Under the pieces are notes generated by a model. That model worked only from the letters and a program-made list of their open reading frames with translations, was not told the origin of the DNA and ran no database searches. Positions 42,201 to 57,087 of a stretch of 64,000 nucleotides of DNA are shown here, in pieces. Numbering within the stretch: the first letter of the stretch is position 1; every line of letters starts with the position of its first letter. This DNA comes from Pocillopora damicornis (taxonomy: Eukaryota), in NCBI RefSeq assembly GCF_003704095.1, contig NW_020846904.1:62001-126000 (forward strand), in the 5' to 3' direction. The position numbers were made by a program, and so were the translations under genes.

Positions 42201-45200
42201 ACACCTTTTAAATTTCAGATTGGACAGAAAGAAATTTGCTTCAAGTGAGCTTTCCTGTTAACCTATGCTCCTGTGGGTACTTTCCTACAACAGAATGTTA
42301 ACAACTACATCGCTTAGTTGAGGTTGGGTGCCTGAAACATCCAGGAGCTTCCATTATTGGCAGCCAGATACTAGATGGAGACTTCTCCCATGGTTGACGA
42401 GAGCTAAAAGTGTATGTTATGATCAACAAAAAACCATACAAACTCTAAAAATTTAAAGATACGTATTCAATTAGCTCACCAGCTAAATGCTTCAGTGGCA
42501 GGACATGTCTCAAGTAAATCATTTATATTTCTGTCAGTGAGCATTGATTAAATCTAGCCTCATTAGAAGGATCTAGTATTGATTATTTCCATAAAGTTTA
42601 GGACAGGAAAGGGAAACATGCCACCGTCACACTGAATAAACAGTGGAAAGAGGAAGAGAAGGGATGGAGAACATTGCCTGGACGATGAACTGCCACTCCT
42701 CACAACGCTGCAAGTTCACACTCAAAGCACATGCAAGAATGCATGCACTGCTGACTTCTAGAAAATACTGATGCTCTTTGTTGTTAACTCCATTAAGCCT
42801 TTTGCCTTATTCCAATGGGTCTTGTTTCATCTACATTGAGTCTAGTCTCATTAAAGCTGGTCACAAAGCTTAGATGCTAGCATAACTCTCAGTCCAAAAT
42901 GTTTGTTGTCATACAATCTCTAGCTCTGCTGGGGCTCAAATAGTGAGGAAGAAACTACTTATAGGCAGTGAATAAAAAAAACAATTTTTTTTTTACCTCA
43001 TTGGCATCAACATGTGATTTTTCTTTCTTTTCCAAGTATTTTCCATTTGTTAAATCCACCAGCAACTCTGCCACATTATTGATGTTAACTGATGCCAGAG
43101 GAGATGACATAGGGGCACTAAATAATGTCTTCAGTGTGGGAAAGAATGCCTCTTCAATCAGCTCCTGATTCATGCTGAAAAAAAAAAAAAGTCAGACTAT
43201 ATGAGTAATGAAGTCAACCAAACCCTCTATTTTTGATATTTGAGTTATTAACTGGTCACATACAGTTTATGAGTGGATGTGCCTATGCAGTGTTCTCCCT
43301 TATTTACGTACAATACAAAAAAATTAAAACTGGCAGAGTAGTCCTTTTACCTGTTGAATTTTCAAGAATTCCAAGCGCTTTTAGGCAGTAATAAGAGGTA
43401 CTTCAGGCAGCAAATTTTACTGGTTACTGCCCAGAAAGGAAAACACTGCCTAAGTGTTATGAAGGTTAGCCTGGATAAGGCATAGTTAGTATTATCTGTA
43501 ATTATTATTGTAAGCTCTGAGGCCTTTATACTTTGCAACAATTGAAATTGGCAGAAAAATTTGCTTTTTTCTTTAGTTTGCATTGTGAAGCCTATTGGCT
43601 AACAAAGCCAGCAGCAAGCAGCAAGCTACAAGCTTGTTCAAAATATCCTACCACTCTAAAAATGAGATGCAAATTTCTTTAGAAAATTGAGCACCTTGAC
43701 TTACCGTGAAGCAAAGGCAAAAACTGGGAAAAAGACACCCAAGCAGTGCCGCAGGTTTACATCATCCTCAGTGGTAGGGTTGTACCACAGCAACAGAAGT
43801 CGTGAAAAAAGTTTGGCACTCAGAACACGACCTGAGAGCAACAACTTGGCCAATCCTTCAGCAGCCACATTCCTAAGGTCATTGCTCTAAAATTATAACA
43901 TTTTTTGGAATGGATAAATCAATTTAAGAAATACAATATACATGTAGATCAAATATGTGATTGTGCTTGCTGGGGAAAGAGACAACCAGAGATGAGAGAA
44001 CTGAAAACCCATAGACAAGTAAGTGAAGATTAAAACTGGATCTCTTTAAACAAAAAACTACAGTGTAAAGAATGGGAAAATTAACCTCGCTCTCTAGAAT
44101 TCCAGTAAGTATTGTAAGCACACTTGCAGCAGTGTCCGTATCTCGAGCCTCGGTCTCTTCCACATCTTCATCCTCTTTCTTTTCTGTGACATCTTCACCT
44201 CCTTCATTTTCATCATTTTCATTGTCTGATTTGTCCTGTTCTGAGTCAGAGGAAGGGGGGTCATCCCCCTCATCATGGACTGAAGTATTGACTTTGAAAG
44301 CCTCAAGACCAAACTTTAGAAGAAGATCAAAAACAACCTGAAGGGCAGTTGTGCGAACAAGCTCTTGGTCTAGTTGGGCCACCTGATATAAAATCAATGA
44401 TGTTCAGCAGTCATGTTATTATTTTGGTAAGTGAACTGCAGGAATGATATCTTGTAAAGAAATTGTTACCTGAAGAAAAAGTACAAGATGTGTGCGGGCA
44501 AATTCACAAGAAAGGAGGGCACACAAACCCAAGCATTTGATAGCCATGTTACGCACTAAGGGATCTTCATTCTGAACACCAGGCAGAATCTGTAGGAAAC
44601 GAAAGGACTGAGTCAGTTCTACATAATTTTTTTAGGAACAGCCCCTTAAAAATATATGGAAATTTTGTTGCACGACCTGGAAAAGGTTCTATAGTCCAGG
44701 ACTAGTCAGGACAAGGGGTCCCTTTGTTTTGGTATACCATTGCAAAAAAATAAAGCTTAAGAGAACTCACTCACTCTTAAGCGACACATCAAAGACATCA
44801 AATTACCAAACAACCACCTGTCAACCATCAATTGCTGGAAGGTTAGGGTAGCAATTACTTTGTATTTCAAATTCCTCAACTGGTAGAACTGACCTTACTG
44901 TATTTCATATGCCTTAGTGTGGCACTAGATTTACCCTATATGAAACTGGCTGTTGAATAAGTTGAGACTAAGAGCACTTAGAAACAATTCAGTTAATGAA
45001 AGGTGTGCAAATTACCAGAGTTTGAACCAAAGTGGTTAGTGTTGGATTCAGTCCACTTGTTGCCACACCCTGCAGCATCTCAGATGCAATGGTTAAACAC
45101 TTCAATAACGTATCAGGATCATCCTTGCAGATGAAAAGAAAATTGCAATTGTATAACATTCACTGCTGAGCAGCTGTACATTTATATAAACTAAAGTTGC

Positions 45201-48200
45201 AATCTTCTTTGTTGTTGGAAATCACTGTAATGCAAGTCAACAATTTTGTCAATAATTTTGTGTTGCATCTATTGAGTTTGAATAGGGTCTGCAGTGCTTA
45301 AAATAATTTCCTGTTTGGTAACAGTCAAGTTGTGCAATCACACCTCTTTTTTACTTGGACACAACCCAATGTCCTTTAAGTCATATCTAAATAGATTCCA
45401 CCCCACCCTCCCTTATAAAATTAGTGTATTTACCACTCTTTTGTTGTACATGCAGCCTCAAACTCAATGCATGAAAAGTGATACAGCCACACTTAGACTC
45501 TGACCTTCCCTTGGAATAAAATTCTTATTTACATCAGTAAGCAACTGGACAAAGTGTCTGGCCAACAAAGGGTTTACCAGACAAAACCTATATTTGACCT
45601 GACATTGTCCATTGACCAGCCATTGTTCTGAGCCCTAGTCTATGAGCCTGAAGGGCAGCAGTTTAAGAGGTGGGGTTCAGAAGGCTGAGACCTCCAGGGA
45701 TGACAAGTTCAGTAACAGGAGAGTCAGAAGCAAAAATGGTCTGCCTGGTGACTGTCCTCCTGCTAAAGCTGTGTTGAAATCATATTTTGTAGTGCTGTAA
45801 TTTCCGGCCATTTACCTGTGGGTAATCTATTGATTTTGCATTAAATGCACGCCACTGCAGGTAGTAGGGAGGTGTGGGTTATGAGACAATTTTAAAATCT
45901 ACTGGAAATCGATATACACCCACCCCACCCCACCACTCCCTCACGCATCCATTCTAAACAATACATGTACATCTATCAAGATATCTTCACATTAAGATTA
46001 CCTTTTCTTCCCTAATAGTCTGGGAAAAGGAGTTCTCTTGTGAATCAAGTATTTCTTTCTGTTCTTCCAGATCTGTAATTTGCTGTTTGAGTTCAGCTGC
46101 CTTAGCAAAATCCTGGTTTGTCACACACTGTTCCATTTCATCACGGTACTGATTAAGTTTAACACTGATTCCAGCAACCTAAAAGTATGGTTACAATCCA
46201 GTGAAGCATTAGCAAACTGTCATTATCTTAAAACTCCAAGGCACACCATGTCTGATCACCACCATACCTCCCCTTCCCTTTAATTTTTCAGTCTGCCAAA
46301 AACTTCTACACCTTGGCACAGAGGGAAAACAAAGGGAAAGCCTACAACTGAACACTGAGATCTTGATTCGATACAGCCATGTTTGTATTTCAAGGATCCT
46401 GTAAACAGATGTTTAAGAGTATCCTATATGTACTACCCCAGCAGTCCTGTTGGATGTACCATTACCTTAAGTTCCCATACTCGTTTTTCTTCCTTGTTTT
46501 GAGGAGTCTCAATCATCACAATAGGTTGTCGAACATCAGCAATAATCTCAACAAGCTCCTGGATTCTACTGCTTTCTTCTGGTTGAACACCTACATATCT
46601 GTCATGTAGGACATCCACCAATGACTCCTGGATCTCCATGTGTACCAACAAGTCATGGATCATCTGGCAAAGATTCTTTCTGCAAAAATATGTACAAAAC
46701 TTTTTAATAACAACCAAAGCAAGGACAAGAGCTGCTACATGCAAGAATCCACAGATGTAAAAAACAAGGTGCATTCATTTGATCAGGAAATATCTAAAAA
46801 CCTTCTGGGAAATGTGATTTGGCTCTGACAACAGTAGTTGGTGCTGACCAGGAATTAAATCCAGAATTTATCTTTTATGTTGATGAAGACAAATAGATAT
46901 CATAATGGAACTAAAAAAGCCTACTTAAGGGCATGATTGGGAAATCGATCTCTTACAAAGAGATAGGGAACAAGGACATTTACTTCTTCATCAATGACAT
47001 TATTTGTTTAACCCTTTACAACCTAACACAAATAATCACATTCTCCGCACTCTAATATCACCACATTTTCTATGGTAATGAAAATAAGCCAGAGAATTTT
47101 TTTGGCAAGAGGGAACTTCATAAATTGGTGATTATTTCTATTATTCTTGTGACCTTTATAGTTTATTCAAGGGTGATGCTGTATGGAGAAATTAGAACAC
47201 AGTCACTCCTACTAGTTCAAGGGTTAAAGCAAACAGCTACAGGAGACAAAACAGCTGTTCCCTTCTTGTTAAAAACTGAATTAATTTTTAGGCTTCTTCT
47301 CTGCAATTGCTAAAATTGCAGCTTATCTGCATGGATCATAGCTTTATTTGATATTTTTACTTTACTATATATATACCTTCCAACTTCATCAGAGAGGTCC
47401 ATTACTCCCACAAGAATCAAAAGTTGCCTGGTGATAAAGTTCTGTTGACTTCCTGAATGATAAGACTCTTCTGAAGATATTCTGGACAAACAGTTGTCAA
47501 CATACCTGTCAATACAGAATGATACTTCAGTGTTTAGTCTTAAAGGTGTGTCCGCAAGCATGTTCTGGTTTCTTTATACCATATAGCCACTAAGAACATT
47601 GCCAATGTCCTTGAATGGGATGCAAGACTTATTTAGAGCATATTTCCTTGACAATTTCTGATACCCATTTATTCCCTCCTTTGTGGGGAAAGACACCGAG
47701 AGGGTTTTCTTTCAACAACACAGGAAAGTGACCAGGCCCAAGATCAAACCTAAAAATATAGGTCTTGCCCGAGAGTCCAATATACTTACATGTATTGCTG
47801 AACCATTGTGTTTCCAAAAAGCCCACAAATTAAACAACAATAACACTAAAAAAAGTAGAAAGATTTCTGTGCAACTTGAGAAAACAATATTGCACATCAT
47901 AATACATTAATTTTATTTTCCAAGATCAAGATATTCATACCCTTGAATGTATTTGCAAAATACTGATACTTCAGGTAGAAGTTCATCCAAAAGTGCTTCA
48001 CCATTCACCCCCATGAACTTCAAATGTTCTCCAAGACATCTCCAATAAAATGCTGTCTCAGCATCTAGATTTTCATAGCTAATTTTTGCAGGGCCTTCTT
48101 CTTGTTGTCCTTTCTTTAAAGAATCAATGTAACCTTGAAGGTCTTCCTTTGGTAATCCTACAATAAGTAAAATATAATAATTTCAAATTCTACATCTGTG

Positions 48201-50065
48201 TACCTATCTCAGTGGTAGGGTACAAATGAAACCCAAATAAAATCAAAGTATATGTATATGTATATATACATACCATTCAGCAATGTCTTTAAAGCCAGTT
48301 CTGCAACCTCTGTGCATCCATCAACATCTAAGCATTTCAGAAGTTTGACCACATCCCCATCAAAATTGTTCAACCACTGTCCAAGAAGCTCCTTTGCACA
48401 AACTTCCTTAATGGCCTCTGATCTGTCATGCAAGCCATTGGAAAGCAGTTGCACACGCTGGGCAATTGTAAATGATTTTATGTTCACCTTCTCTGCTAGG
48501 ATACGATAAGCTAACTTTCGTACTGATTCTGTCAAATCTTGGGTTCTTCCTGCAGAAAAGATGGCAAGGCACTGGTAGATAATGCTTATTTTAATTCAAA
48601 ATGCCAAATACAAAATATTTTTTGACACACCATTAACATCCTAGTCAAGCTGACCATTAAAAAATACTTTTCAGGCATAATAACTAGAAATAGCAAAGCT
48701 CCTGGAATTTCAAAGATTTATGCAATTATACTAACATAAGGGTAATTGCTATCATCTGAGTCATACAAGTGACCCATGCTCTTGCCTTAGAGGCTTGTGA
48801 AAAAAACATTTTGCAGTTATTTCATTCAGGAAGTGGAAAATAACATTTTTTCTTGGATTTCATGACTATAAAGATTTACCTATTATTCCCTCCAATGTCT
48901 GAGAAGTAAGAGCAACATTCAGGAGCACAGCTCTGCGCACTTCAACACTGGAGTCATTTGACATGAGTTTTAAGTATGTGGATATTACAATGCACTCAGG
49001 ATCTGAGGGGTCCTGGAGCCTGGAAATAGCTGCAACAGCTTGCACTCTCACAGCAGGAAACTTGTCGTGGAGCCGTATCAACATGCTCTCAAATATCCTC
49101 TCTGCCAGATCGTCATCAATAACAGCATCATCACCCATGTTATTCAAGAGCTTGTTGATTAGCTGACAGACACGGAATCTTACAGCTTTGTCTTTAGCAT
49201 CATGCGAGTCCAGCAAGAAAGTGAAGACGGAGTCAAGGAAAACATTGCTGTAATCATCTTCCTCCCCATCACTTCTATTGCCATCCTATTTGTTTAGACA
49301 AGAAACTTTATCAGAGAGAAACCCCAGGTGTCATTTCAGGAGACTCCAAATACATTGCAAAGATTTGGGGTCAAGATCGACCTCAACTCCACTGTATTAA
49401 TAGGAAACTGAATTAACTCCTGCCCACCTGTTCCATTCTCTATTCATCATCATCACCAAAGGTTACAATTATGAACATGTCATGGTGTTCATTAATTAAA
49501 AAGAAAAGAACTAAATTAAATATAATCCGAGAAACAGCAACCTCTCGTGCCAGCTTCAAGGGATCATAACGAATTACTTTGTCTTCACTTGGTGTTCATG
49601 GCATAAGTCTGCGTTCAAATCAAAACATTTTGACTCGAGTAGTACTTTAAAACTAATAGAGGAAGTGGCATAATACAAATATTTTAGATACATAATATAT
49701 ACACAAGCAAATGTATTTATAAAATCTTGCAATCCCCATGCTTCCTCGTGTCCTCTCAGGATTCACTCAGATGTATTTCCCTTTCCAAATTTTTTGACAC
49801 ATATATGTTATACCTGTTCAGTTTGAGAGGTACGATGATCTTTTAGCGTTGCGTACTTGGCCACGAACTCGATGACTCTTTCAACAGCAGGTTCTCTATT
49901 AAAAACAACCATCGCATGTTTCAAATGTAACAAGAAACTTTCCAGAAATTCATCAGGAGAGGACTTGTCGTGGAGCTTTTTCAAATCCGCTAACAGCTTG
50001 TGCTGTTGAAAACTACGCTGAGCTTGTTCAAAAACACTTCTCACGCTATCATACCGTGAAGGCAT
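39275..50065 (-). CDS. NCAPG: Condensin I subunit CAP-G (HEAT repeats), ~1095 aa, 18 exons
   Basis: Motifs REPAVERVIEF, AKDKAVRFRVCQLINKLL, DKFPAVRVQAVAAISRLQDP, DSSVEVRRAVL, VRKLAYRILA and AAEGLAKLLL...LLWYNP. Exons 49814-50065, 48880-49285, 48274-48549, 47941-48157, 47377-47505, 46466-46679, 46002-46178, 45016-45123, 44470-44589, 44086-44382, 43705-43886, 42997-43174, 41699-41869, 40920-40998, 40283-40474, 39960-40080, 39550-39600, 39275-39392 are phase-consistent. Confidence 0.95.
41208..41395. mobile_element. piggyBac-type MITE, second subfamily
   Basis: Collinear with 11040-11243 (CCCAGAAG.GATT..CAT...CAGCAAACAGG...CACCAAATTCTC...CTAATTTACA.GGAAATG). Confidence 0.7.
47008..47227. mobile_element. 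piggyBac-type MITE copy
   Basis: TTAACCCTTT...AAGGGTTAA. Confidence 0.8.
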
Positions 50066-50228: not shown

Positions 50229-51792
50229 ATGGCGGTCAATTGGAAAATCTACTTCATTCCACTTCCTCTTCTGTTATTAACCTATTATTTATTATTTTCT
50301 GGACGAAAAGCAACCAAAAGAAACGATCATCACAAAGGAAGGCAAAGCGGTGCTGAAAGAAATAACGGAAAACCAGAGTGCCCGTCTAATTTTCAGGTAG
50401 TTGACGAAACTTGCGTTCGTTGCCCGCGCGGCCATTTTAGTTTTCGAGGTTGGATTGCGTGTTTACAATGGTTAGATTGTACCAGTATCGCTCTTGACGT
50501 GAGGACTAGACGCAGAATTGGTATTCCAGGTCATTTGAATGCGGTCAAAGAAGTCTATTTGGCGGATTGGCAGGGGTATGATGTGGTGTATAGTAAATGC
50601 GCGAGTGACCTTTATTACGAAGATTGCCTACATGGAATGTATATGGTGGAAGGCCTTCAAAGGAGTGAATTTGTAGTACAGCTCATTGGCATTTGCTATA
50701 ATGACAGTCTAGAGGTGAATTTTGTCAATTTTGTCTTTTAACTCCCGGGTTAGGAGACTTTCTTAACTTTATCTTTGAGGTGACGTAATCACATGGCTAT
50801 GATATGCCTTGACTGTTTACAACGATGTGTTTGAAAAAAATTCCTTTATTTACTCTTCTATCAGTGGAAAAGTGATAAAATTGTTAAATTCCGTCATAAT
50901 TAGAGGTAAAACCTCGGAAAAAATAGACCAAATCATTTTAAATATTTGGAAACAATTTGTGAAGAATTGAACGATTTCCGTTCAGCCTGTTGTATTCTAA
51001 AATGAAGTATTAGTTCCGTAGGTATACTCTTAATTTGGCTTTTTTTATTTTCTATAACTGTATACATAATGAAGTTGGGGTTACATGCAATTTTGTCCTT
51101 TCACCTGTATAACCAGGTATGACCTTTCTCCACGTAATCGGTGACATTATCAATGTTGCATTTTATGGAACTTCTTTTAATCATAAATAATTTTTTTATC
51201 TCTTAAATAGCACCACCCCTCCCCACCCCTCCCCACCCCTCCCCACCCTTCTTTTTAAATCTGGAATGCAACAGAAAACACACTCACACAATTTAGTTTT
51301 GTACAACATATTCTCAGGGTGGAGGAAGAGTTGTGGAGAGATACAGTACCATGATCAAAATGATGCTAGGAACCATAAAATTCTCTAGGAAAGAATATTC
51401 ATGTGACTATCGTGAATATACTAGGAAAATTTACATAATGCGCGGTAAACTTAATAACTTTAAAGTTCAGCTGTTAAAGTTCACTGACCCAACCTCTCAT
51501 CACTAAATAAGCATAACGAACTCGTATCTTCATCCCGACACAGAAACAAAGCGTTGCTACGCAACAGCTGAACTTTAAAGTTTTTAAGTTTACCGCGCAT
51601 TATGTAAATTTTCCTAGTATATACACAATAGTCACATGAATATTCTTTCATTAAATCCCTGAAGAGTGAAGCGATTCACGAAACAGGCTTGTCGGGAAAC
51701 GTAGTTGCGTCCTTTTTTCCTCTCACAATATTTATTCTGCTCTGCTTCAATGTATTGAGCACTGTTCCACGCGAAAATTGACTTGCAGACTT

Positions 51793-51831
<39 letters not shown>

Positions 51832-52613
51832 AGATGGGAAATTGTTTCAGCTCTGTTTGTGTTAGTTTTTCGAGAGGGTGAGACAAAGAAAAAATCTGAG
51901 TCCTCCACAAGGATTGGAAAATGAATATTATTACTTTTTGTTCATTTATGTTCATGTAACCAGTGTTTGGATGTTGATGCAGTGATATCTGAAACCCTTG
52001 TGTTTATTATTATCAGATGGTAACAGGATATTACAAGCATGGCTCAGCAGACACACTTGATGAACTCCTGGAGAGACCAGAACTTGGTCACTTCAACACT
52101 CTAGAAACAAGATTTCAACTAGGCATAGACTATGTTAAAATCCTCCAATTTCTTCATAACAGTCCTCTTGGTGTGCGGGTCATGTGTGATTCAAATGACA
52201 TAACCAAGACATTGTCACAGTACCTGATAACAAATGATTTTCATCTTGTCGTCAATGATCTTGATGCTTTACCAGAAGTAAAAGCAGATGAAGGTGAACT
52301 GATCAAGTGTGGTCACAGAGAACTGTATGGTGATTTTGTAGCCCCTGAACAGTTGTGGCCTTACTCACGCCCTTTTGATGATGAAGAAATGCCTCCCTAT
52401 GATGAAAAGATTGACATCTGGAGAATACCCAATGTTGTTGACAAACTGCTAGGCCGAGTTCATAATAGTAACTATGTCAGACGCCTTCTGATAGGGATTC
52501 ATGAGTCTTGTAAACAAGAAGATCCAGAAGAGAGGCCATCAGCTACTGAGGTTCTTGAAGTATTTTTGAATGTACAGAAAATTATTTCGGCAGGAACGAG
52601 GCAGGACCTCTAA
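50229..52613 (+). CDS. POMK: Protein O-mannose kinase (SGK196), type II membrane kinase, ~360 aa, 2 exons
   Basis: N-terminal TM segment, CPRGHF...C..WL.C, and the POMK-specific RVMCDSND..KTLSQYL, NDLDALP, KCGHREL.GDFVAPEQLWPY, YDEKIDIW. Exons 50229-50714 and 52017-52613 join in phase 0. Confidence 0.96.
51389..51649. mobile_element. Foldback/MITE with ~87-bp TIRs in the POMK intron
   Basis: 51389-51475 is nearly perfectly reverse-complementary to 51563-51649. Confidence 0.9.
51795..51828. repeat. (TA)n microsatellite
   Basis: Direct reading. Confidence 0.95.
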
Positions 52614-53557
52614 CCGGTATTTTCAGATTTTTAAATGAAATTTTAAGTTTTTTCAACTGTAACTGCTCAATAAAATTTGAACCACCTAATCACTCGATGT
52701 TATCGTCAACGCAGCCCATTTTCCTACGTCGTTTCAAGGCCCTTCGTATTTGTTCTGCTGGGAACAAGTTTTAATTAGTTTGGACTCTCCTGTGATTAAA
52801 TATTTGACCACAGTGAATGCTGTTTTACAGAGGGTTAGGTCGGTTGCACACAACATGCACAAAACGTCTCAATCCCCATTCGATATCAATACGGTTAGCT
52901 CAGGAAGTAAGTCCCTCAGCATTTGCATTGTTTCTGATTGGACACTGGAAACAAGAAAAACCTTGAAAACGTATGGAGCAAGATACGTACTAGTTTGTCT
53001 CATTTAAAAGGGGTATTCGCAAGCTGAACCCTTACGGAGTGGGAGTCATATCAGAGTGCACCAACTTGAATAAACGCTTGAAAAAACAGTTTCTCTACCA
53101 AGAAAAGGACAAAGCAAACATTTGTTTAGTGCAGTGAGCCAGCTTTCTAAACATTACTCAGCACAGCTTGCTTTTCTTTCTACATACTGATATAAAATGA
53201 AAGAAATGATGACCATTAAATTACAAGTTTGGCATTAAACGCCGTTTATTTAAATTTATTTTCAAATTTTACAGATCTCGCATTGGCTGGTGCTGAAGTA
53301 ATCATAAACGGTACTTTGTCGGGTAAAGTGTTTCAGGGGTAGGAATTCTTGGTCAATTTAAGTATTTATCTGGAACAAAGGTCACACCAAACTCAACTTA
53401 ATTCATGTGCGAAGGAATTTAGTTCAAACGATATGGGTCACTTACGACGATTCCGACGACTAGCTATTCCATGTCTGCGGTATTACATCGTGCGTCAGAT
53501 ATTATTTGTCAACCGTGATATTATTTTTCAACGGATATTAGTCGTCAACCGTGAAAC

Positions 53558-53986
53558 TCACGAATGTTTGATACCGTTATATAAACAAGGACAACATAAA
53601 CGAAGCCATGAACAGCAAGGACAAAGTACACATTCATCGTCCTCTTCCTGATCTTTATCGGCAGGACTTATCAGTAGTTCTTTCTCGCTTTTTGGCATCA
53701 ATATTCCAGTATGTGTCTCAACTGGTTCGTGTGCTCGCCTTTTTTTGATTCCGTATTTTCCTCTCATGTCAGATCGTAGTTTTTCTCTTATTGCTTCCAT
53801 TTTATGGTGTTTCTTTTTCCTTGCCTTCGCCTCTTTATTCAGTTCTTTTTCAGCTCTTTCTATGTCCTTTTTATTCAAATTCTCCATACTGAGTGTTTTT
53901 CCGATATCTCCGCCTAATTCCCCAACTCTGCCAGTAACGCCACTTGTTGCACTCGATACAAGATATTTGGCCGCAAAAGTCGCCAT
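53558..53986 (-). CDS. CPLX: Complexin (synaphin)-family protein, 142 aa, single coding exon, Cys-rich C-terminus
   Basis: N-terminus MATFAAKYLV and central helix ARKKKHHKMEAIREKLRSDMRGKYGIKK align to the complexin SNARE-binding helix ([28 protein letters not shown] in mammalian CPLX1, recalled). Confidence 0.88.
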   Translation of the reverse strand: MATFAAKYLVSSATSGVTGRVGELGGDIGKTLSMENLNKKDIERAEKELNKEAKARKKKHHKMEAIREKLRSDMRGKYGIKKRRAHEPVETHTGILMPKSEKELLISPADKDQEEDDECVLCPCCSWLRLCCPCLYNGIKHS

Positions 53987-53996
53987 TTGGGAAGGC

Positions 53997-55413
53997 CTAT
54001 CGTAAAATCACAGACAAAAATATACAAAACGAACGATATCCTCGTGGCATGGTTGCCACTTTACATTATCACTATTTTTTTCAGGTTCTGCTAGAATGTG
54101 CGCAAAAGGAATTTTGACTTCAGACGAAATAATTACTAAGTGGAAGAAGTTTTTGTTGAAGATGCATGACCCTCCCAATTAGATAAATAAAAATTACTTG
54201 CGCCGTTTCGCTTTTCCAAGCTTCGCCATTTGACTTGATTACTGCAGTAAACTGATCCATTACAAAACTCTTCATTTGTATGATCCGGTGCACCCCCCTG
54301 TCAGAGTTTTTCGTGTTCAGAGAGCCATTGACACAAAAATTGCATGACTAATCTTCTTAAAATTACATGAAATATTTTCTGAGCTTAATTTTATGATAAA
54401 ATCTGTCAGGGGCTCCTCAGGAATGGGCAAGAGAAAAACTTTCTTGGGAGAAAGCTAAGGAAATAAGTGGTACCTAATTTTGCGTCGGTACACATGTAGA
54501 AAGAAGAAGAAAATGCCCGCATAATAGTGCTGCCTTTCTATAAGAGGGAAAAAAATTACTCGTGTGTCTATAGGAAGCAAGACTCCCCCATGCGCTCTAT
54601 GAATGCTATTTTTCACTTTACGCCAAAGAAATTCACAGTTTGCCAAATGCAACGTACAAGCAAACAAACTTTGAAAGTTTCTTTATGTAAAAAGTTGTCA
54701 AGTGCTGTTTTTCAATGGGTATCTTTGGTCAACCGTTGAAATTAGCCCAGCGGGGAAATAACGTTCCGATGAAGTGACCGTTAGTTTTATAACAGTCAAT
54801 ACTGGACAACAATTTTTGAAAATCTTTAGACGTTGTAAACGCATATTCGCATAACTTAATAGCTGAAAATTGCGAATTATTTTCCGCATGTTGTTATTTC
54901 TGACATGATCTACGTGTCGGATATTGTTTGATTTTGCGTAATTTAAACAGCCCACAAGGGAAAAAGGTACGTCAACGCGTGAGTCAACTTTGTAGTCTAC
55001 TGCATATTAATTTCCTCCGTGTTTCTTGAGGGAATTCTAGTAATCCCTTGGAAAACTATCGACGAAGTCGGAGAGGAATGAAAAGGAGAATGATGTTTGC
55101 GGAACTCAGATTTGAAACACGGTGATAATGTCCTGTTCACAGTAGCTTTGGTGATCCGGCATGGAATTTGTATTATTCAATAAACAATAACATTAACTGA
55201 TAGATTAAGATTTGTCGACTATTGTCAGTTTAAAAACTGAACCCCGTCGCCTCAAATTAACTAGAAAGTAAAAGCGTTCATCGAAAGTGAATTCCGGATC
55301 GAACTTTAATCAGTCTCAACTTAAACTTTCTTGACTTGCTCAGACGGTGTACAAAATTAAACTATAACAACACAGTACAAGCATCGAGGTGTTTTCAATT
55401 AAAAGCCACTTAC
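53997..55413 (-). other. Probable 5'UTR intron of the complexin gene
   Basis: Pyrimidine-rich acceptor (tttttgtctgtgattttacgatag) 10 nt upstream of the ATG, and a strong donor GCG|gtaagt at 55414/55413. Confidence 0.5.
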
Positions 55414-56347
55414 CGCTAAACCGAGGATGATCGTGTTCTCCACGTAGCAACAAAATCTAAACGGAAGGCCTTCTCCCGCATTTTCAAGGTGGTAAGCTTC
55501 ACCGACGGGCCACGCTGCTAAGACAACCGTTAAGCGCTAGCTACTGTAATTTATGTTACTAAATATCTCTCACTACGTCACCGAAATTTACGTCTCTCCC
55601 GTTGACAAAAAAAACTTTGTATGGAAATTAATTATGCGCATTCACGTGTAACTAAGTACATCGCGACCGTTGTTTGCTAGGAACATATTAAAGATGAATT
55701 AGGAAAACATTTGGGTGATTCCAATTTTATCCTATTTGAAAGCAAGGTTTTGGAAAGAATATTATGGATGCGAACTCTTGCTAAAGAAAAATTATGCTAT
55801 GGAACAATTTGTCGAGCAAAAGAAAATAATGGTTAGTAGAGCTTATTATGGAAGGTCAGTAACTTCAAGGTCATGCTGGGAAATTGTCACTCATCCATTG
55901 AATCAAATGTCTAAACAGGGTAACAACGTCACGAAAACGTTTTTGCTCTTTCTGCTTCTCTCCCTTCCCTTTAAATTATTTTAGTGACTGTTACAAAGCA
56001 ACTTCATCAACACTTGGTAAAAGAGACACCTGTTACTAAATAGCCAGGTGCGAGAGGCTCTAATTAGCGCTGCAACGGGGGTCCGTGTTTGCTCTCCCAG
56101 AACCCCTTTACAGTCCTCACCCGCTAGCTTTTTTTATTCGCTGGTTTGAATCTCACGCGCTTCGCCGCTCTTTCCGAAGAGCTACTGAGTATGAAAGCCT
56201 GCCCGTAGGCGACCTAACAGATGAAGAGGACCAGGAAAAATAGACTTTGGACAACATTTACTGAATGAGTTGGTGCTACTACATGAAGGAAAATGACATG
56301 AGCTCCGCAAATTTTATTCTCGGCGACGTGATTGACTTGGGATGTTT

Positions 56348-56415
56348 ACTCTGCGAGAAGAGTCTTCTTTCACCCCCTCTTTGGAGGAGGTGAAAGAAGA
56401 CTCTGCGGGCAGGGT
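56348..56415. repeat. 68-nt hairpin element
   Basis: AGAGTCTTCTTTCACC / GGTGAAAGAAGACTCT perfect 16-bp stem, extended by imperfect flanks. Confidence 0.85.
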
Positions 56416-57087
56416 GAGGGTGTTTTTACACTGTTAAATATTCTTACTTCAAGCATAAAACGTGCATGCCGTGCAACTTGTTTAAGGCCGTTGAAAGGCG
56501 CTTAGCATAACGGTTTAAGTATTGTGGATATTGTAGGCTTGAATGAAAGTATCAGTATCACATGGCATTTATTACATCGAATTTCCGTTGGAATTTTAAA
56601 ATTGACGTTTTGCCACGTGAAACTCCACTCGAAACAGTTATAACGTCTGTTCCCTCAGGCTCTAAACCAGCAGCCGCACCTCCTTTTATCATTATGATCT
56701 ATATGCAAATTGTGACCTCATTGAATGATTCCAGCTGGTTCTTTCTCGCAGAACTCGTCGACCTTTACACCCTGATGTACAATCTATGTCAGTCCTCTCG
56801 ACCCATTATCATCCTCCTTCCCCTTTTAAATTATTATTCCCAATTTTCGTTTTCCTATCTTACAAACCATATATTTTGAGGTTTTCTTCACAGTGGAGGT
56901 AATTTTTCACGTCGTTAAGAACAGGTTCAACCATCATGGCTCAACTCCGCAGGAGTTTGACTTGATGTTTTTCCCAGTGTTGAAGTTGTGGATTAGAAAG
57001 ATTCAGAATTATGACAGAATTAGGTTGAAGCTGGCATAAGAAATTTATTCAAGTTCTTTTACAAGAATTTTGAAGTTACTGTTGCAG

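What the first reader, a model, noticed from the sequence alone, without database searches (positions are those of the whole stretch)
53558..53986. Complexin with a cysteine-string tail instead of a CAAX box
Seen: the SNARE-binding helix keeps the residues equivalent to CPLX1 R48, R59, R63, K69 and Y70, but the protein ends EEDDECVLCPCCSWLRLCCPCLYNGIKHS, with 7 Cys in 16 residues and no terminal CAAX. Established: complexins attach to membranes through a farnesylated CAAX (CPLX3/4 and many invertebrate forms) or an amphipathic helix (CPLX1/2), while Cys clusters in SNAP-25 and CSP are palmitoylated. Inference: this is a third anchoring mode, a reversibly palmitoylated complexin. It may have arisen by extension past an ancestral CAAX (internal CVLC) with a short duplication (TTGTCCTTG occurs twice). 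The CDS is also intronless. It could serve a specialised secretory cell type such as neurons, cnidocytes or gland cells.
Basis: partly seen in the sequence, partly recalled or inferred. Interest (0 to 1): 0.8.

Follow-up and report, generated by a model that had tools for sequence, protein, structure and literature searches.

The report
Coral complexin with cysteine-cluster tail
A stony-coral gene encodes complexin, a regulator of vesicle release, whose tail is a conserved cluster of cysteines instead of the usual lipid-attachment signal, probably giving it a different, reversible way of holding on to membranes.

Summary
Window 53558..53986 (-) is an intact 142-aa complexin (Pfam Synaphin, 64.6 bits against a cut-off of 27). 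It keeps the residues matching Cpx1 R48, R59, R63, K69 and Y70, and ends in 7 Cys within 16 residues with no CAAX.

The gene is real and expressed. RNA contigs from three studies show a spliced mRNA: a 5'UTR exon, a 1.4-kb GT-AG intron, then one exon holding the whole CDS, the 3'UTR and AATAAA. Nothing splices out of the tail.

The tail is conserved. 115 relatives carry 4-8 Cys in their last 32 residues, among them Pocillopora, Stylophora, Acropora, Porites, Desmophyllum and Oculina, plus deeper unnamed lineages. On a tree built without the tail columns they form one group (98/94).

The same genome has a second complexin ending in CLVM, a CAAX box. That family includes Exaiptasia.

No member has a transmembrane-like segment. 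In most, the last Cys lies 7-10 residues from the end, which rules out prenylation. Multiple S-acylation is the best reading, but it is inferred, not shown.

The proposed relic CAAX (CVLC) and recent 9-nt duplication are not supported. I found no paper describing such a complexin. I rate it a new variant of a known kind, of moderate interest.

The parts
55413..55569 (-). 5'UTR exon (minimum extent seen)
   Evidence: RNA contigs of X6 and X10 join 55413 onward to 53995; the X10 contig reaches 55569 (tables 5 and 8).
53997..55412 (-). Intron in the 5'UTR, about 1417 nt, GT..AG on the minus strand (boundary ambiguous by 1-2 nt)
   Evidence: A joint that skips 1417 nt, with ends CT..AC on the plus strand, is seen in X5, X6 and X10, which are three studies (table 5). 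X1 holds an unspliced contig covering 53221-55374.
53221..53996 (-). Last exon: about 10 nt of 5'UTR, the whole CDS and a 3'UTR of about 335 nt
   Evidence: Contigs from four runs end at 53221-53243. Depth is zero from 52669 to 53169 in all four runs.
53558..53986 (-). Complexin CDS, 142 aa plus stop
   Evidence: ORF list; Pfam Synaphin at 64.6 bits; PDB complexin-1 hits.
53753..53872 (-). Long helix, residues 39-78 (accessory plus central SNARE-binding helix). The central part, residues 56-78, aligns to Cpx1 48-70.
   Evidence: The AF2 model gives a helix at 39-78 with pLDDT 82-94.
53669..53740 (-). Family-specific conserved motif, residues 83-106 (R-x-H-E-P-V-E-T-H-T-G-I-L ... S-E-K-E-L-L)
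   Evidence: The columns H86, P88, V89, E90, H92, G94, I95, L96 and E101-L105 are invariant or nearly so. AF2 models a hairpin plus a short helix here, with pLDDT about 84-89. The CAAX paralog lacks it.
53633..53659 (-). Acidic patch, residues 110-118
   Evidence: The median net charge is -7 in the 12 residues before the first tail Cys, across 115 members.
53585..53632 (-). Cysteine cluster, residues 119-134, with 7 Cys in 16 residues; the proposed S-acylation site
   Evidence: Sequence. C119, C121, C124 and C131 are at least 90% conserved, along with W127 and P133. The family carries 4-8 Cys.
53561..53584 (-). Polar C-terminal end, residues 135-142, ending K-H-S; no CAAX
   Evidence: Sequence. 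K-H-S is the commonest ending, in 50 of 115 members.
53245..53260 (-). Two AATAAA polyadenylation signals
   Evidence: Read from the sequence. The RNA contigs end about 20-25 nt downstream.

Best explanation
This is one of two complexin genes of a pocilloporid stony coral. The protein has an ordinary complexin front end: an N-terminal domain, then an accessory and central helix with the SNARE-contact residues. It should therefore bind assembled SNARE complexes and regulate Ca2+-triggered exocytosis like other complexins. Its C-terminal membrane-binding element differs. Directly after the acidic patch that complexins generally carry sits a short hydrophobic cluster of 5-8 cysteines, followed by 7-10 polar residues. 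The most likely mechanism is that DHHC acyltransferases S-acylate (palmitoylate) several of these cysteines, tethering the protein to vesicle or plasma membranes as in SNAP-25 and cysteine-string protein. Because S-acylation is reversible, membrane residence could be regulated. The sister gene in the same genome keeps the classical farnesyl CAAX anchor. Shown here: the gene, its transcript, its family membership, conservation of the tail, the single grouping of Cys-tail complexins, and the absence of a CAAX box or transmembrane segment. Inferred: SNARE binding, acylation, and membrane anchoring.
For: It is a complexin by Pfam and by PDB hits, and the contact residues are kept. AF2 models a confident helix at residues 39-78 and a tail of low confidence with no fold. 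A spliced, polyadenylation-signal-bearing mRNA appears in RNA contigs of three studies, and no joint leaves the CDS. The Cys cluster is conserved in 115 retrieved proteins, with 73 distinct tails and 4-8 Cys each. Named members are Pocillopora meandrina, Stylophora pistillata, four Acropora species, two Porites species, Desmophyllum pertusum and Oculina patagonica. More divergent unnamed lineages have differently spelled clusters, including five consecutive Cys in P0093. With the tail columns removed, all 22 sampled Cys-tail proteins fall on one side of a branch with support 98/94, apart from the CAAX complexins. Positional orthology is supported by a conserved convergent neighbour gene in L007 and L010. 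What is conserved is composition more than exact positions. Stylophora differs from Pocillopora at 5-6 tail positions out of 10 differences in all, including one Cys to Tyr, yet stays Cys-rich. That pattern fits a lipidation cluster better than a metal site. The last Cys lies 7-10 residues from the end in most members, so CAAX and Rab-type prenylation are excluded. No member has a 19-residue Kyte-Doolittle window of 1.6 or more, so none is tail-anchored. The tail matches no Pfam domain. The genome encodes at least 14 DHHC loci. Established knowledge: internal Cys clusters in the cytosolic presynaptic proteins SNAP-25 and CSP are S-palmitoylated.
Against: There is no direct evidence of acylation, and no predictor or proteomic data could be consulted. 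Four Cys positions (119, 121, 124, 131), W127 and P133 are at least 90% conserved within the coral subset, and His86, His92 and His141 are conserved nearby. A small metal-binding or redox-sensitive element is therefore not excluded. The cluster follows a strongly acidic patch, whereas many palmitoylation clusters sit next to basic or hydrophobic membrane-affinity segments. The cell type and subcellular location are unknown. The taxa of the deep lineages are unknown, since they come only from metagenome and RNA-assembly records.
Confidence: 0.65

Rival explanations
1. The Cys cluster, perhaps together with the conserved histidines, is a small metal-binding (Zn) or redox/NO-sensing element. It would control complexin conformation or partner binding and would not be a lipid anchor.
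For: Four Cys positions plus W127 and P133 are at least 90% conserved among 21 coral-type sequences. H86 and H92 are nearly invariant, and H141 is common. The neighbouring motif at residues 83-106 is modelled with high confidence. S-nitrosylation of a complexin Cys is reported in Drosophila (title and abstract of PMC5890968).
Against: The number and spacing of Cys vary among lineages, from 4 to 8. Cys is exchanged for Tyr, Phe or Ser, and one member has five consecutive Cys and nothing else. AF2 gives the tail pLDDT below 50 and no fold. There is no Pfam match. Group D lacks the H-E-P-x-E-T-H motif.
Confidence: 0.15
2. The tail binds membranes or a protein partner through its hydrophobic, Cys-rich character alone, without covalent lipid. 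It would be a functional replacement for the amphipathic or hydrophobic C-terminal motif of Cpx1/2 and worm CPX-1.
For: Hydrophobic residues (W, L, V, F, Y) are interspersed in the cluster. It occupies the same place, after the acidic patch, as the amphipathic motif of Cpx1/2. The held literature says all complexin CTDs end in a lipid-binding motif or a CAAX box.
Against: With Cys scored as Ser the tail is not hydrophobic: the median best window is -0.26. The constraint is therefore on Cys itself. No helix is predicted.
Confidence: 0.15
3. The gene is an artefact, a pseudogene or a mis-called C-terminus, and the true protein ends in a CAAX exon reached by splicing.
For: Drosophila complexin has alternative C-terminal exons (review PMC4611016). 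Contigs drop rare isoforms (notes).
Against: RNA contigs of four runs run straight through the tail, the stop and the 3'UTR to the AATAAA signals. RNA depth is zero in the roughly 500 nt beyond, up to the convergent neighbour gene. The tail reading frame is conserved in 115 proteins from genomes and transcriptomes.
Confidence: 0.02

Closest known systems
CAAX-box (farnesylated) complexins: vertebrate Cpx3/4, many invertebrate complexins, and this genome's own second complexin (L002:1414-1761, ends CLVM)
   Same: Both belong to the Synaphin family and are small proteins with a central helix and an acidic C-terminal region. Both rely on a Cys-based C-terminal element thought to hold the protein on membranes. 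Both coral genes have an uninterrupted CDS.
   Different: There is no terminal CaaX; the last Cys is 8 residues from the end. There are 7 Cys instead of 1. The protein carries an extra conserved motif at residues 83-106. It is only 35% identical to the CAAX paralog over 84 residues and lies on a separate, well-supported branch. The expected lipid would be a thioester-linked acyl group, which is reversible, instead of a thioether-linked farnesyl, which is permanent.
Cpx1/2 and C. elegans CPX-1 type complexins (amphipathic helix plus hydrophobic C-terminal motif)
   Same: The central helix contact residues are the same, and an acidic stretch precedes the membrane-binding end.
   Different: No amphipathic helix is predicted in the tail; a Cys cluster takes its place.
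Palmitoylated Cys clusters of SNAP-25 (linker) and cysteine-string protein (DNAJC5)
   Same: All are short clusters of 4 or more Cys mixed with hydrophobic residues and Pro, in cytosolic proteins of the exocytic machinery that have no transmembrane segment. The comparison rests on established knowledge.
   Different: They are not homologous; the resemblance is one of composition and presumed function only. Here the cluster sits at the C-terminal end of a complexin and follows an acidic patch. Acylation was not tested.

Membership tests
Complexin / synaphin (Pfam PF05835) | Profile match above the curated threshold | tested here: met
   64.6 bits against a cut-off of 27, E 1.6e-17, residues 3-120.
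Complexin / synaphin (Pfam PF05835) | Central helix with the SNARE-contact residues (Cpx1 R48, R59, R63, K69, Y70) | tested here: met
   The alignment to PDB 5w5c_E gives R56, R67, R71, K77 and Y78. Y52 is His60, as in several invertebrate hits. AF2 models a helix at residues 39-78.
Complexin / synaphin (Pfam PF05835) | Binds the assembled SNARE complex | not testable with these tools
   A complex prediction would need five chains of coral SNAREs and was not attempted.
CAAX-prenylated complexins (Cpx3/4 type) | Cys at the fourth position from the C-terminus (CaaX) | tested here: not met
   The protein ends L-Y-N-G-I-K-H-S, with the last Cys 8 residues from the end. In 115 relatives the last Cys is mostly 7-10 residues from the end. 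Only P0079/P0164 end in a formal C-x-x-X (C-F-C-K).
Cpx1/2-type complexins | C-terminal amphipathic helix and hydrophobic end motif | tested here: inconclusive
   AF2 gives no confident helix after residue 106. No amphipathic-moment analysis was done.
S-acylated Cys-cluster membrane anchors (SNAP-25 / CSP-like; a functional class, not a homology family) | Cluster of several Cys in a cytosolic protein without a transmembrane segment | tested here: met
   7 Cys in 16 residues, and 4-8 across the family. No Kyte-Doolittle window reaches 1.6.
S-acylated Cys-cluster membrane anchors (SNAP-25 / CSP-like; a functional class, not a homology family) | Thioester-linked fatty acid on the Cys residues | not testable with these tools
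   This needs acyl-biotin exchange or click-labelling. DHHC enzymes are present, with at least 14 loci, which is expected of any animal.
CYSTM / tail-anchored Cys-rich transmembrane modules | C-terminal Cys-rich transmembrane helix; Pfam match | tested here: not met
   The last 40 residues give no Pfam hit at E up to 10. The best 19-residue hydropathy is 1.19 here and at most 1.40 in the family.

The most novel reading that the evidence does not exclude
Cnidarians possess an ancient second class of complexin. If the deep unnamed lineage is hydrozoan, as its Tara Pacific origin hints, this class predates the split between Anthozoa and Medusozoa. It would be anchored by multiple reversible S-acylation instead of farnesylation or an amphipathic helix. 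One animal would then run two complexins with a permanent and a switchable membrane tether, possibly in different secretory cell types. That would be a third, regulated mode of complexin membrane targeting.
Probability: 0.5. Interest if true: 0.65.

Novelty: new variant of a known kind. Interest (0 to 1): 0.55.

Why it matters
The complexin C-terminus decides where the protein sits and whether it clamps spontaneous fusion. The field currently recognises two solutions: a CAAX farnesyl group, or amphipathic/hydrophobic motifs (PMC5445133). A conserved, expressed Cys-cluster complexin alongside a CAAX paralog in the same animal offers a natural experiment on how the kind of anchor tunes complexin function, permanent against reversible. 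It also adds a data point on early diversification of the release machinery in non-bilaterians. The gene models are already in public databases as 'complexin-like', so what is new is the reading of the tail and its family-wide conservation, not the gene.

Tried and rejected
1. Relic CAAX (CVLC): rejected. Stylophora has CVLY, and other corals have C-T/E/I-C-S at the aligned positions.

2. Recent short duplication (TTGTCCTTG twice): the repeat is there, but both C-P-C motifs are shared across old lineages, and the 9-mer is simply TGT-CCT-TG codons. It is not evidence of a recent event.

3. Tail-anchor or CYSTM reading: rejected.

4. A third complexin locus in this genome: none found, with either the Pfam profile or the divergent P0079 as query.

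5. Taxonomy of the divergent Cys-tail lineages (groups around P0025/P0076/P0169/P0170, P0077/P0167/P0168 and P0079/P0171/P0093): cluster look-ups and contig records gave no organism names. A paper search for the run and sample accessions found nothing.

6. Yang et al. 2015 (EMBO Rep; Nematostella complexins) is not held, so I could not check whether it shows such tails.

7. Cell-type expression: the supplements held for the Stylophora cell atlas list Synaphin only as a neural gene family, with no per-gene data.

8. The SNAP-25 linker family search in the own genome returned nothing and is uninformative, because it is a short domain matched exon by exon.

9. The ESM Atlas gave only generic complexin clusters.

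10. P0023 and P0078, apparent truncated Cys-less variants, are C-to-T converted copies of this gene. They look bisulfite-like, and Gln113 CAG reads as a stop. They are not real isoforms.

Full report
**What is at the coordinates**

Window 53558..53986 on the minus strand is a 142-codon ORF starting at ATG and including its stop. It matches Pfam Synaphin (PF05835) at 64.6 bits against a gathering score of 27, E 1.6e-17, over residues 3-120. phmmer against PDB sequences finds complexin-1 chains, the best being 5w5c_E at E 1.8e-6.

Counting along that alignment, where chain numbering equals Cpx1 numbering, gives:
- R56 = R48
- R67 = R59
- R71 = R63
- R75 = R67
- K77 = K69
- Y78 = Y70

Y52 is His60 here. 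That His is nearly invariant in the family, and the aligned position is also His in at least one other complexin-type hit (P0132).

After an acidic patch (residues 110-118) come 7 Cys in 16 residues (119-134). Eight further residues follow, ending K-H-S. There is no terminal CaaX.

**The organism**

The assembly has 234.35 Mb in 4393 contigs. The protein is letter-for-letter P0028, whose accessions are withheld. It sits in one 90% cluster with Pocillopora meandrina CAH3122515.1 ('Complexin-1') and Stylophora pistillata XP_022790506.1 ('complexin-like'). The window therefore comes from a pocilloporid stony coral, most likely a Pocillopora. That species call is an inference.

**Gene structure and expression**

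Fourteen RNA runs hold the stretch. I laid contigs from four runs of four studies on 51500-56500.

- In three studies (X5, X6, X10) a contig joins about 53995/6 to 55413. It skips 1417 nt whose ends are CT..AC on the plus strand, which is GT..AG on the minus strand.
- The mRNA therefore has a 5'UTR exon (55413 to at least 55569), an intron ending about 10 nt before the ATG, and one terminal exon (about 53996 down to 53221-53243). That exon holds the complete CDS and a 3'UTR of about 335 nt.
- Two AATAAA signals lie at 53260-53255 and 53250-53245 on the minus strand, about 20-25 nt before the contig ends.
- No joint leaves the coding region.
- The roughly 500 nt beyond the 3' end have zero depth in all four runs. 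Then comes a convergent neighbour gene (52015-52653, plus strand).

The refuting scenario, in which transcripts splice to a CAAX-ending exon, is not seen. Contigs can hide rare isoforms, so this check is not exhaustive. 'Intronless' holds for the CDS only.

**Conservation of the tail**

The word-indexed protein search gave 27 relatives. Their alignment shows the Cys-rich tail in all full-length members.

Named members cover both major scleractinian clades:
- Pocillopora, Stylophora, Desmophyllum and Oculina
- Acropora digitifera, A. millepora, A. palmata and A. cervicornis
- Porites lobata and P. harrisoni

The exhaustive profile search of 1.84 billion representatives gave 92 complexin-type hits. 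Cys-rich tails appear only in the top-scoring relatives. The remainder end in CAAX or in the Cpx1/2-type L-P-G-P-L-Q-D-M-F-K-K motif.

A second word search, seeded with the divergent members, added P0167-P0171.

Altogether I collected 115 proteins with at least 4 Cys in the last 30 residues, giving 73 distinct tails:
- They carry 4-8 Cys in the last 32 residues (mean 5.97), against 0.13 Cys in the entire remainder of the protein.
- The last Cys is 7-10 residues from the end in most.
- K-H-S is the commonest ending.

**Phylogeny**

I built a maximum-likelihood tree of 53 complexins: 22 with Cys tails, 11 cnidarian CAAX-type and 20 others. With the tail columns excluded (alignment columns 1-174 only), all 22 Cys-tail proteins fall on one side of a branch with support 98/94. 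The first tree, with the tail columns included, gave 99/98.

Inside that group there is a deep split between P0079/P0171/P0093 and everything else. The root is not known, so 'clade' is conditional on rooting. One origin of the Cys tail is compatible with the tree and is the simplest reading.

Positional orthology is supported independently. In two unnamed genomic contigs the Cys-tail complexin is followed by the same convergent gene as in the window: L007 for P0167, and L010 for P0017. That neighbour is 66% and 77% identical to window 52017-52610.

The taxa of the divergent lineages could not be established. P0164 comes from a Tara Pacific metagenome scaffold. From my own knowledge, that expedition sampled Pocillopora, Porites and the hydrozoan Millepora, so a hydrozoan origin is a reasonable guess but no more.

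**The sister gene**

The genome has exactly two Synaphin loci. The second is L002:1414-1761 on the minus strand, on contig C649. It is an uninterrupted 115-codon ORF ending C-L-V-M, a classical CAAX box.

Its 37 relatives almost all end K-Q-C-x-V/I/L-M. They include Oculina patagonica and Exaiptasia diaphana 'complexin-2'.

The two paralogs are 35% identical over 84 residues. A farnesyl-type complexin and a Cys-cluster complexin therefore coexist, and the split is older than the stony corals.

**What the tail most likely does**

- CAAX-type and Rab-type prenylation need Cys at or within three residues of the C-terminus. That condition is not met here.
- No family member has a 19-residue Kyte-Doolittle window of 1.6 or more. 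The value is 1.19 for this protein, with a family median of 0.64 and a maximum of 1.40.
- With Cys scored as Ser the tail is hydrophilic. It is therefore not a tail anchor, and the constraint is on Cys itself.
- The tail has no Pfam match at E up to 10.
- AF2 gives it pLDDT below 50, while the helix at 39-78 scores 82-94.
- The number and placement of Cys drift between lineages. Cys is exchanged for Tyr in Stylophora and for Phe or Ser elsewhere, and P0093 has five Cys in a row. Cys-richness, the preceding acidic patch (median net charge -7) and interspersed W, L, F and P persist throughout.

Compositional conservation of this kind is what lipidation clusters such as those of SNAP-25 and CSP show (established knowledge). 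The genome encodes at least 14 DHHC loci.

I therefore rate multiple S-acylation as the most likely mechanism, at about 0.65.

The main rival is a small metal-binding or redox element. Four Cys, W127 and P133 are at least 90% conserved within the coral subset, and conserved histidines lie nearby. A non-lipidated hydrophobic membrane or partner motif is the third option.

The internal CVLC is not a relic CAAX. Stylophora reads CVLY, and other corals have C-T/E/I-C-S at the aligned positions.

The 9-mer TTGTCCTTG does occur twice in the tail. However, it is simply Cys-Pro-Cys spelled with the same codons, and both C-P-C motifs are shared by old lineages. It says nothing about a recent duplication.

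An uninterrupted CDS is also found in the CAAX paralog and in all relatives recovered as plain ORFs.

**Literature**

[quoted passage not shown] A 2015 review and a 2026 paper likewise mention only CAAX lipidation (PMC4611016; PMC13454271).

Searches combining complexin with palmitoylation, cysteine-rich or cnidarian terms found nothing relevant. Yang et al. 2015 is not held, so prior mention there cannot be excluded.

**Verdict**

This is a real, expressed and well-conserved complexin paralog with a Cys-cluster tail. The gene is already annotated in public databases. The tail's significance appears undescribed in the literature I could search. I rate it a new variant of a known kind, with interest 0.55.

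The search of earlier findings returned nothing for this place.

Noticed in passing
P0002, P0003 (205-206 aa) and P0024, P0026 (145-147 aa); contigs of 69,023 and 53,800 nt in ENA: Some coral relatives carry a Cys-tail complexin with an internal tandem duplication of the central helix plus the H-x-P-V-E-T-H motif, giving two SNARE-binding helices in one protein. Shorter, degenerate-looking copies lie on the same contigs.
   Followed up: partly
window 53669-53740 (-), residues 83-106: A conserved motif specific to the Cys-tail family lies between the central helix and the acidic patch: R-x-H-E-P-V-E-T-H-T-G-I-L ... S-E-K-E-L-L. AF2 models it as a hairpin plus a short helix at pLDDT about 84-89. 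It is absent from the CAAX paralog and only partly present in the deepest lineage. Its function is unknown.
   Followed up: partly
L002:1414-1761 (-) = G000:C649, about 76.1-76.5 kb: This is the second complexin gene of the genome. It is 115 aa in one uninterrupted ORF, has a Ser-rich linker and ends CLVM (a CAAX box). Its relatives end K-Q-C-x-V-M.
   Followed up: yes
window 50229-50741 and 52017-52613 (+): A convergent neighbour gene has two long ORF pieces with no Pfam hit. It is expressed (RNA contigs at 52015-52653). It is conserved next to the Cys-tail complexin in two other genomes, at 66% and 77% identity. From memory it resembles a kinase-like protein, but this was not tested.
   Followed up: partly
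window 43924-49216 (-): ORF pieces here match HEAT repeats and the condensin subunit Cnd3 C-terminal domain (PF12719, 28.7 bits). They are probably exons of a condensin complex subunit 3 gene.
   Followed up: no
P0023 (112 aa) and P0078 (79 aa), Logan assemblies: These apparent truncated, Cys-less variants equal the translation of this CDS with every C read as T. Ala becomes Val, Thr becomes Ile, His becomes Tyr, and Gln113 becomes a stop. They are most likely assemblies of bisulfite-converted reads, not isoforms.
   Followed up: yes
window 53221-55374 and 54014: Run X1 holds an unspliced contig across the 5'UTR intron, which is either pre-mRNA or DNA carry-over. One X5 contig has a 9-nt insertion (CAAAAATAT) after 54014, inside the intron.
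   Followed up: no
window 51500-51785: Short RNA contigs of very high word depth (up to about 870) lie here, with many differences and loose ends in all four runs. It may be a repeat or a highly expressed element shared with other loci.
   Followed up: no
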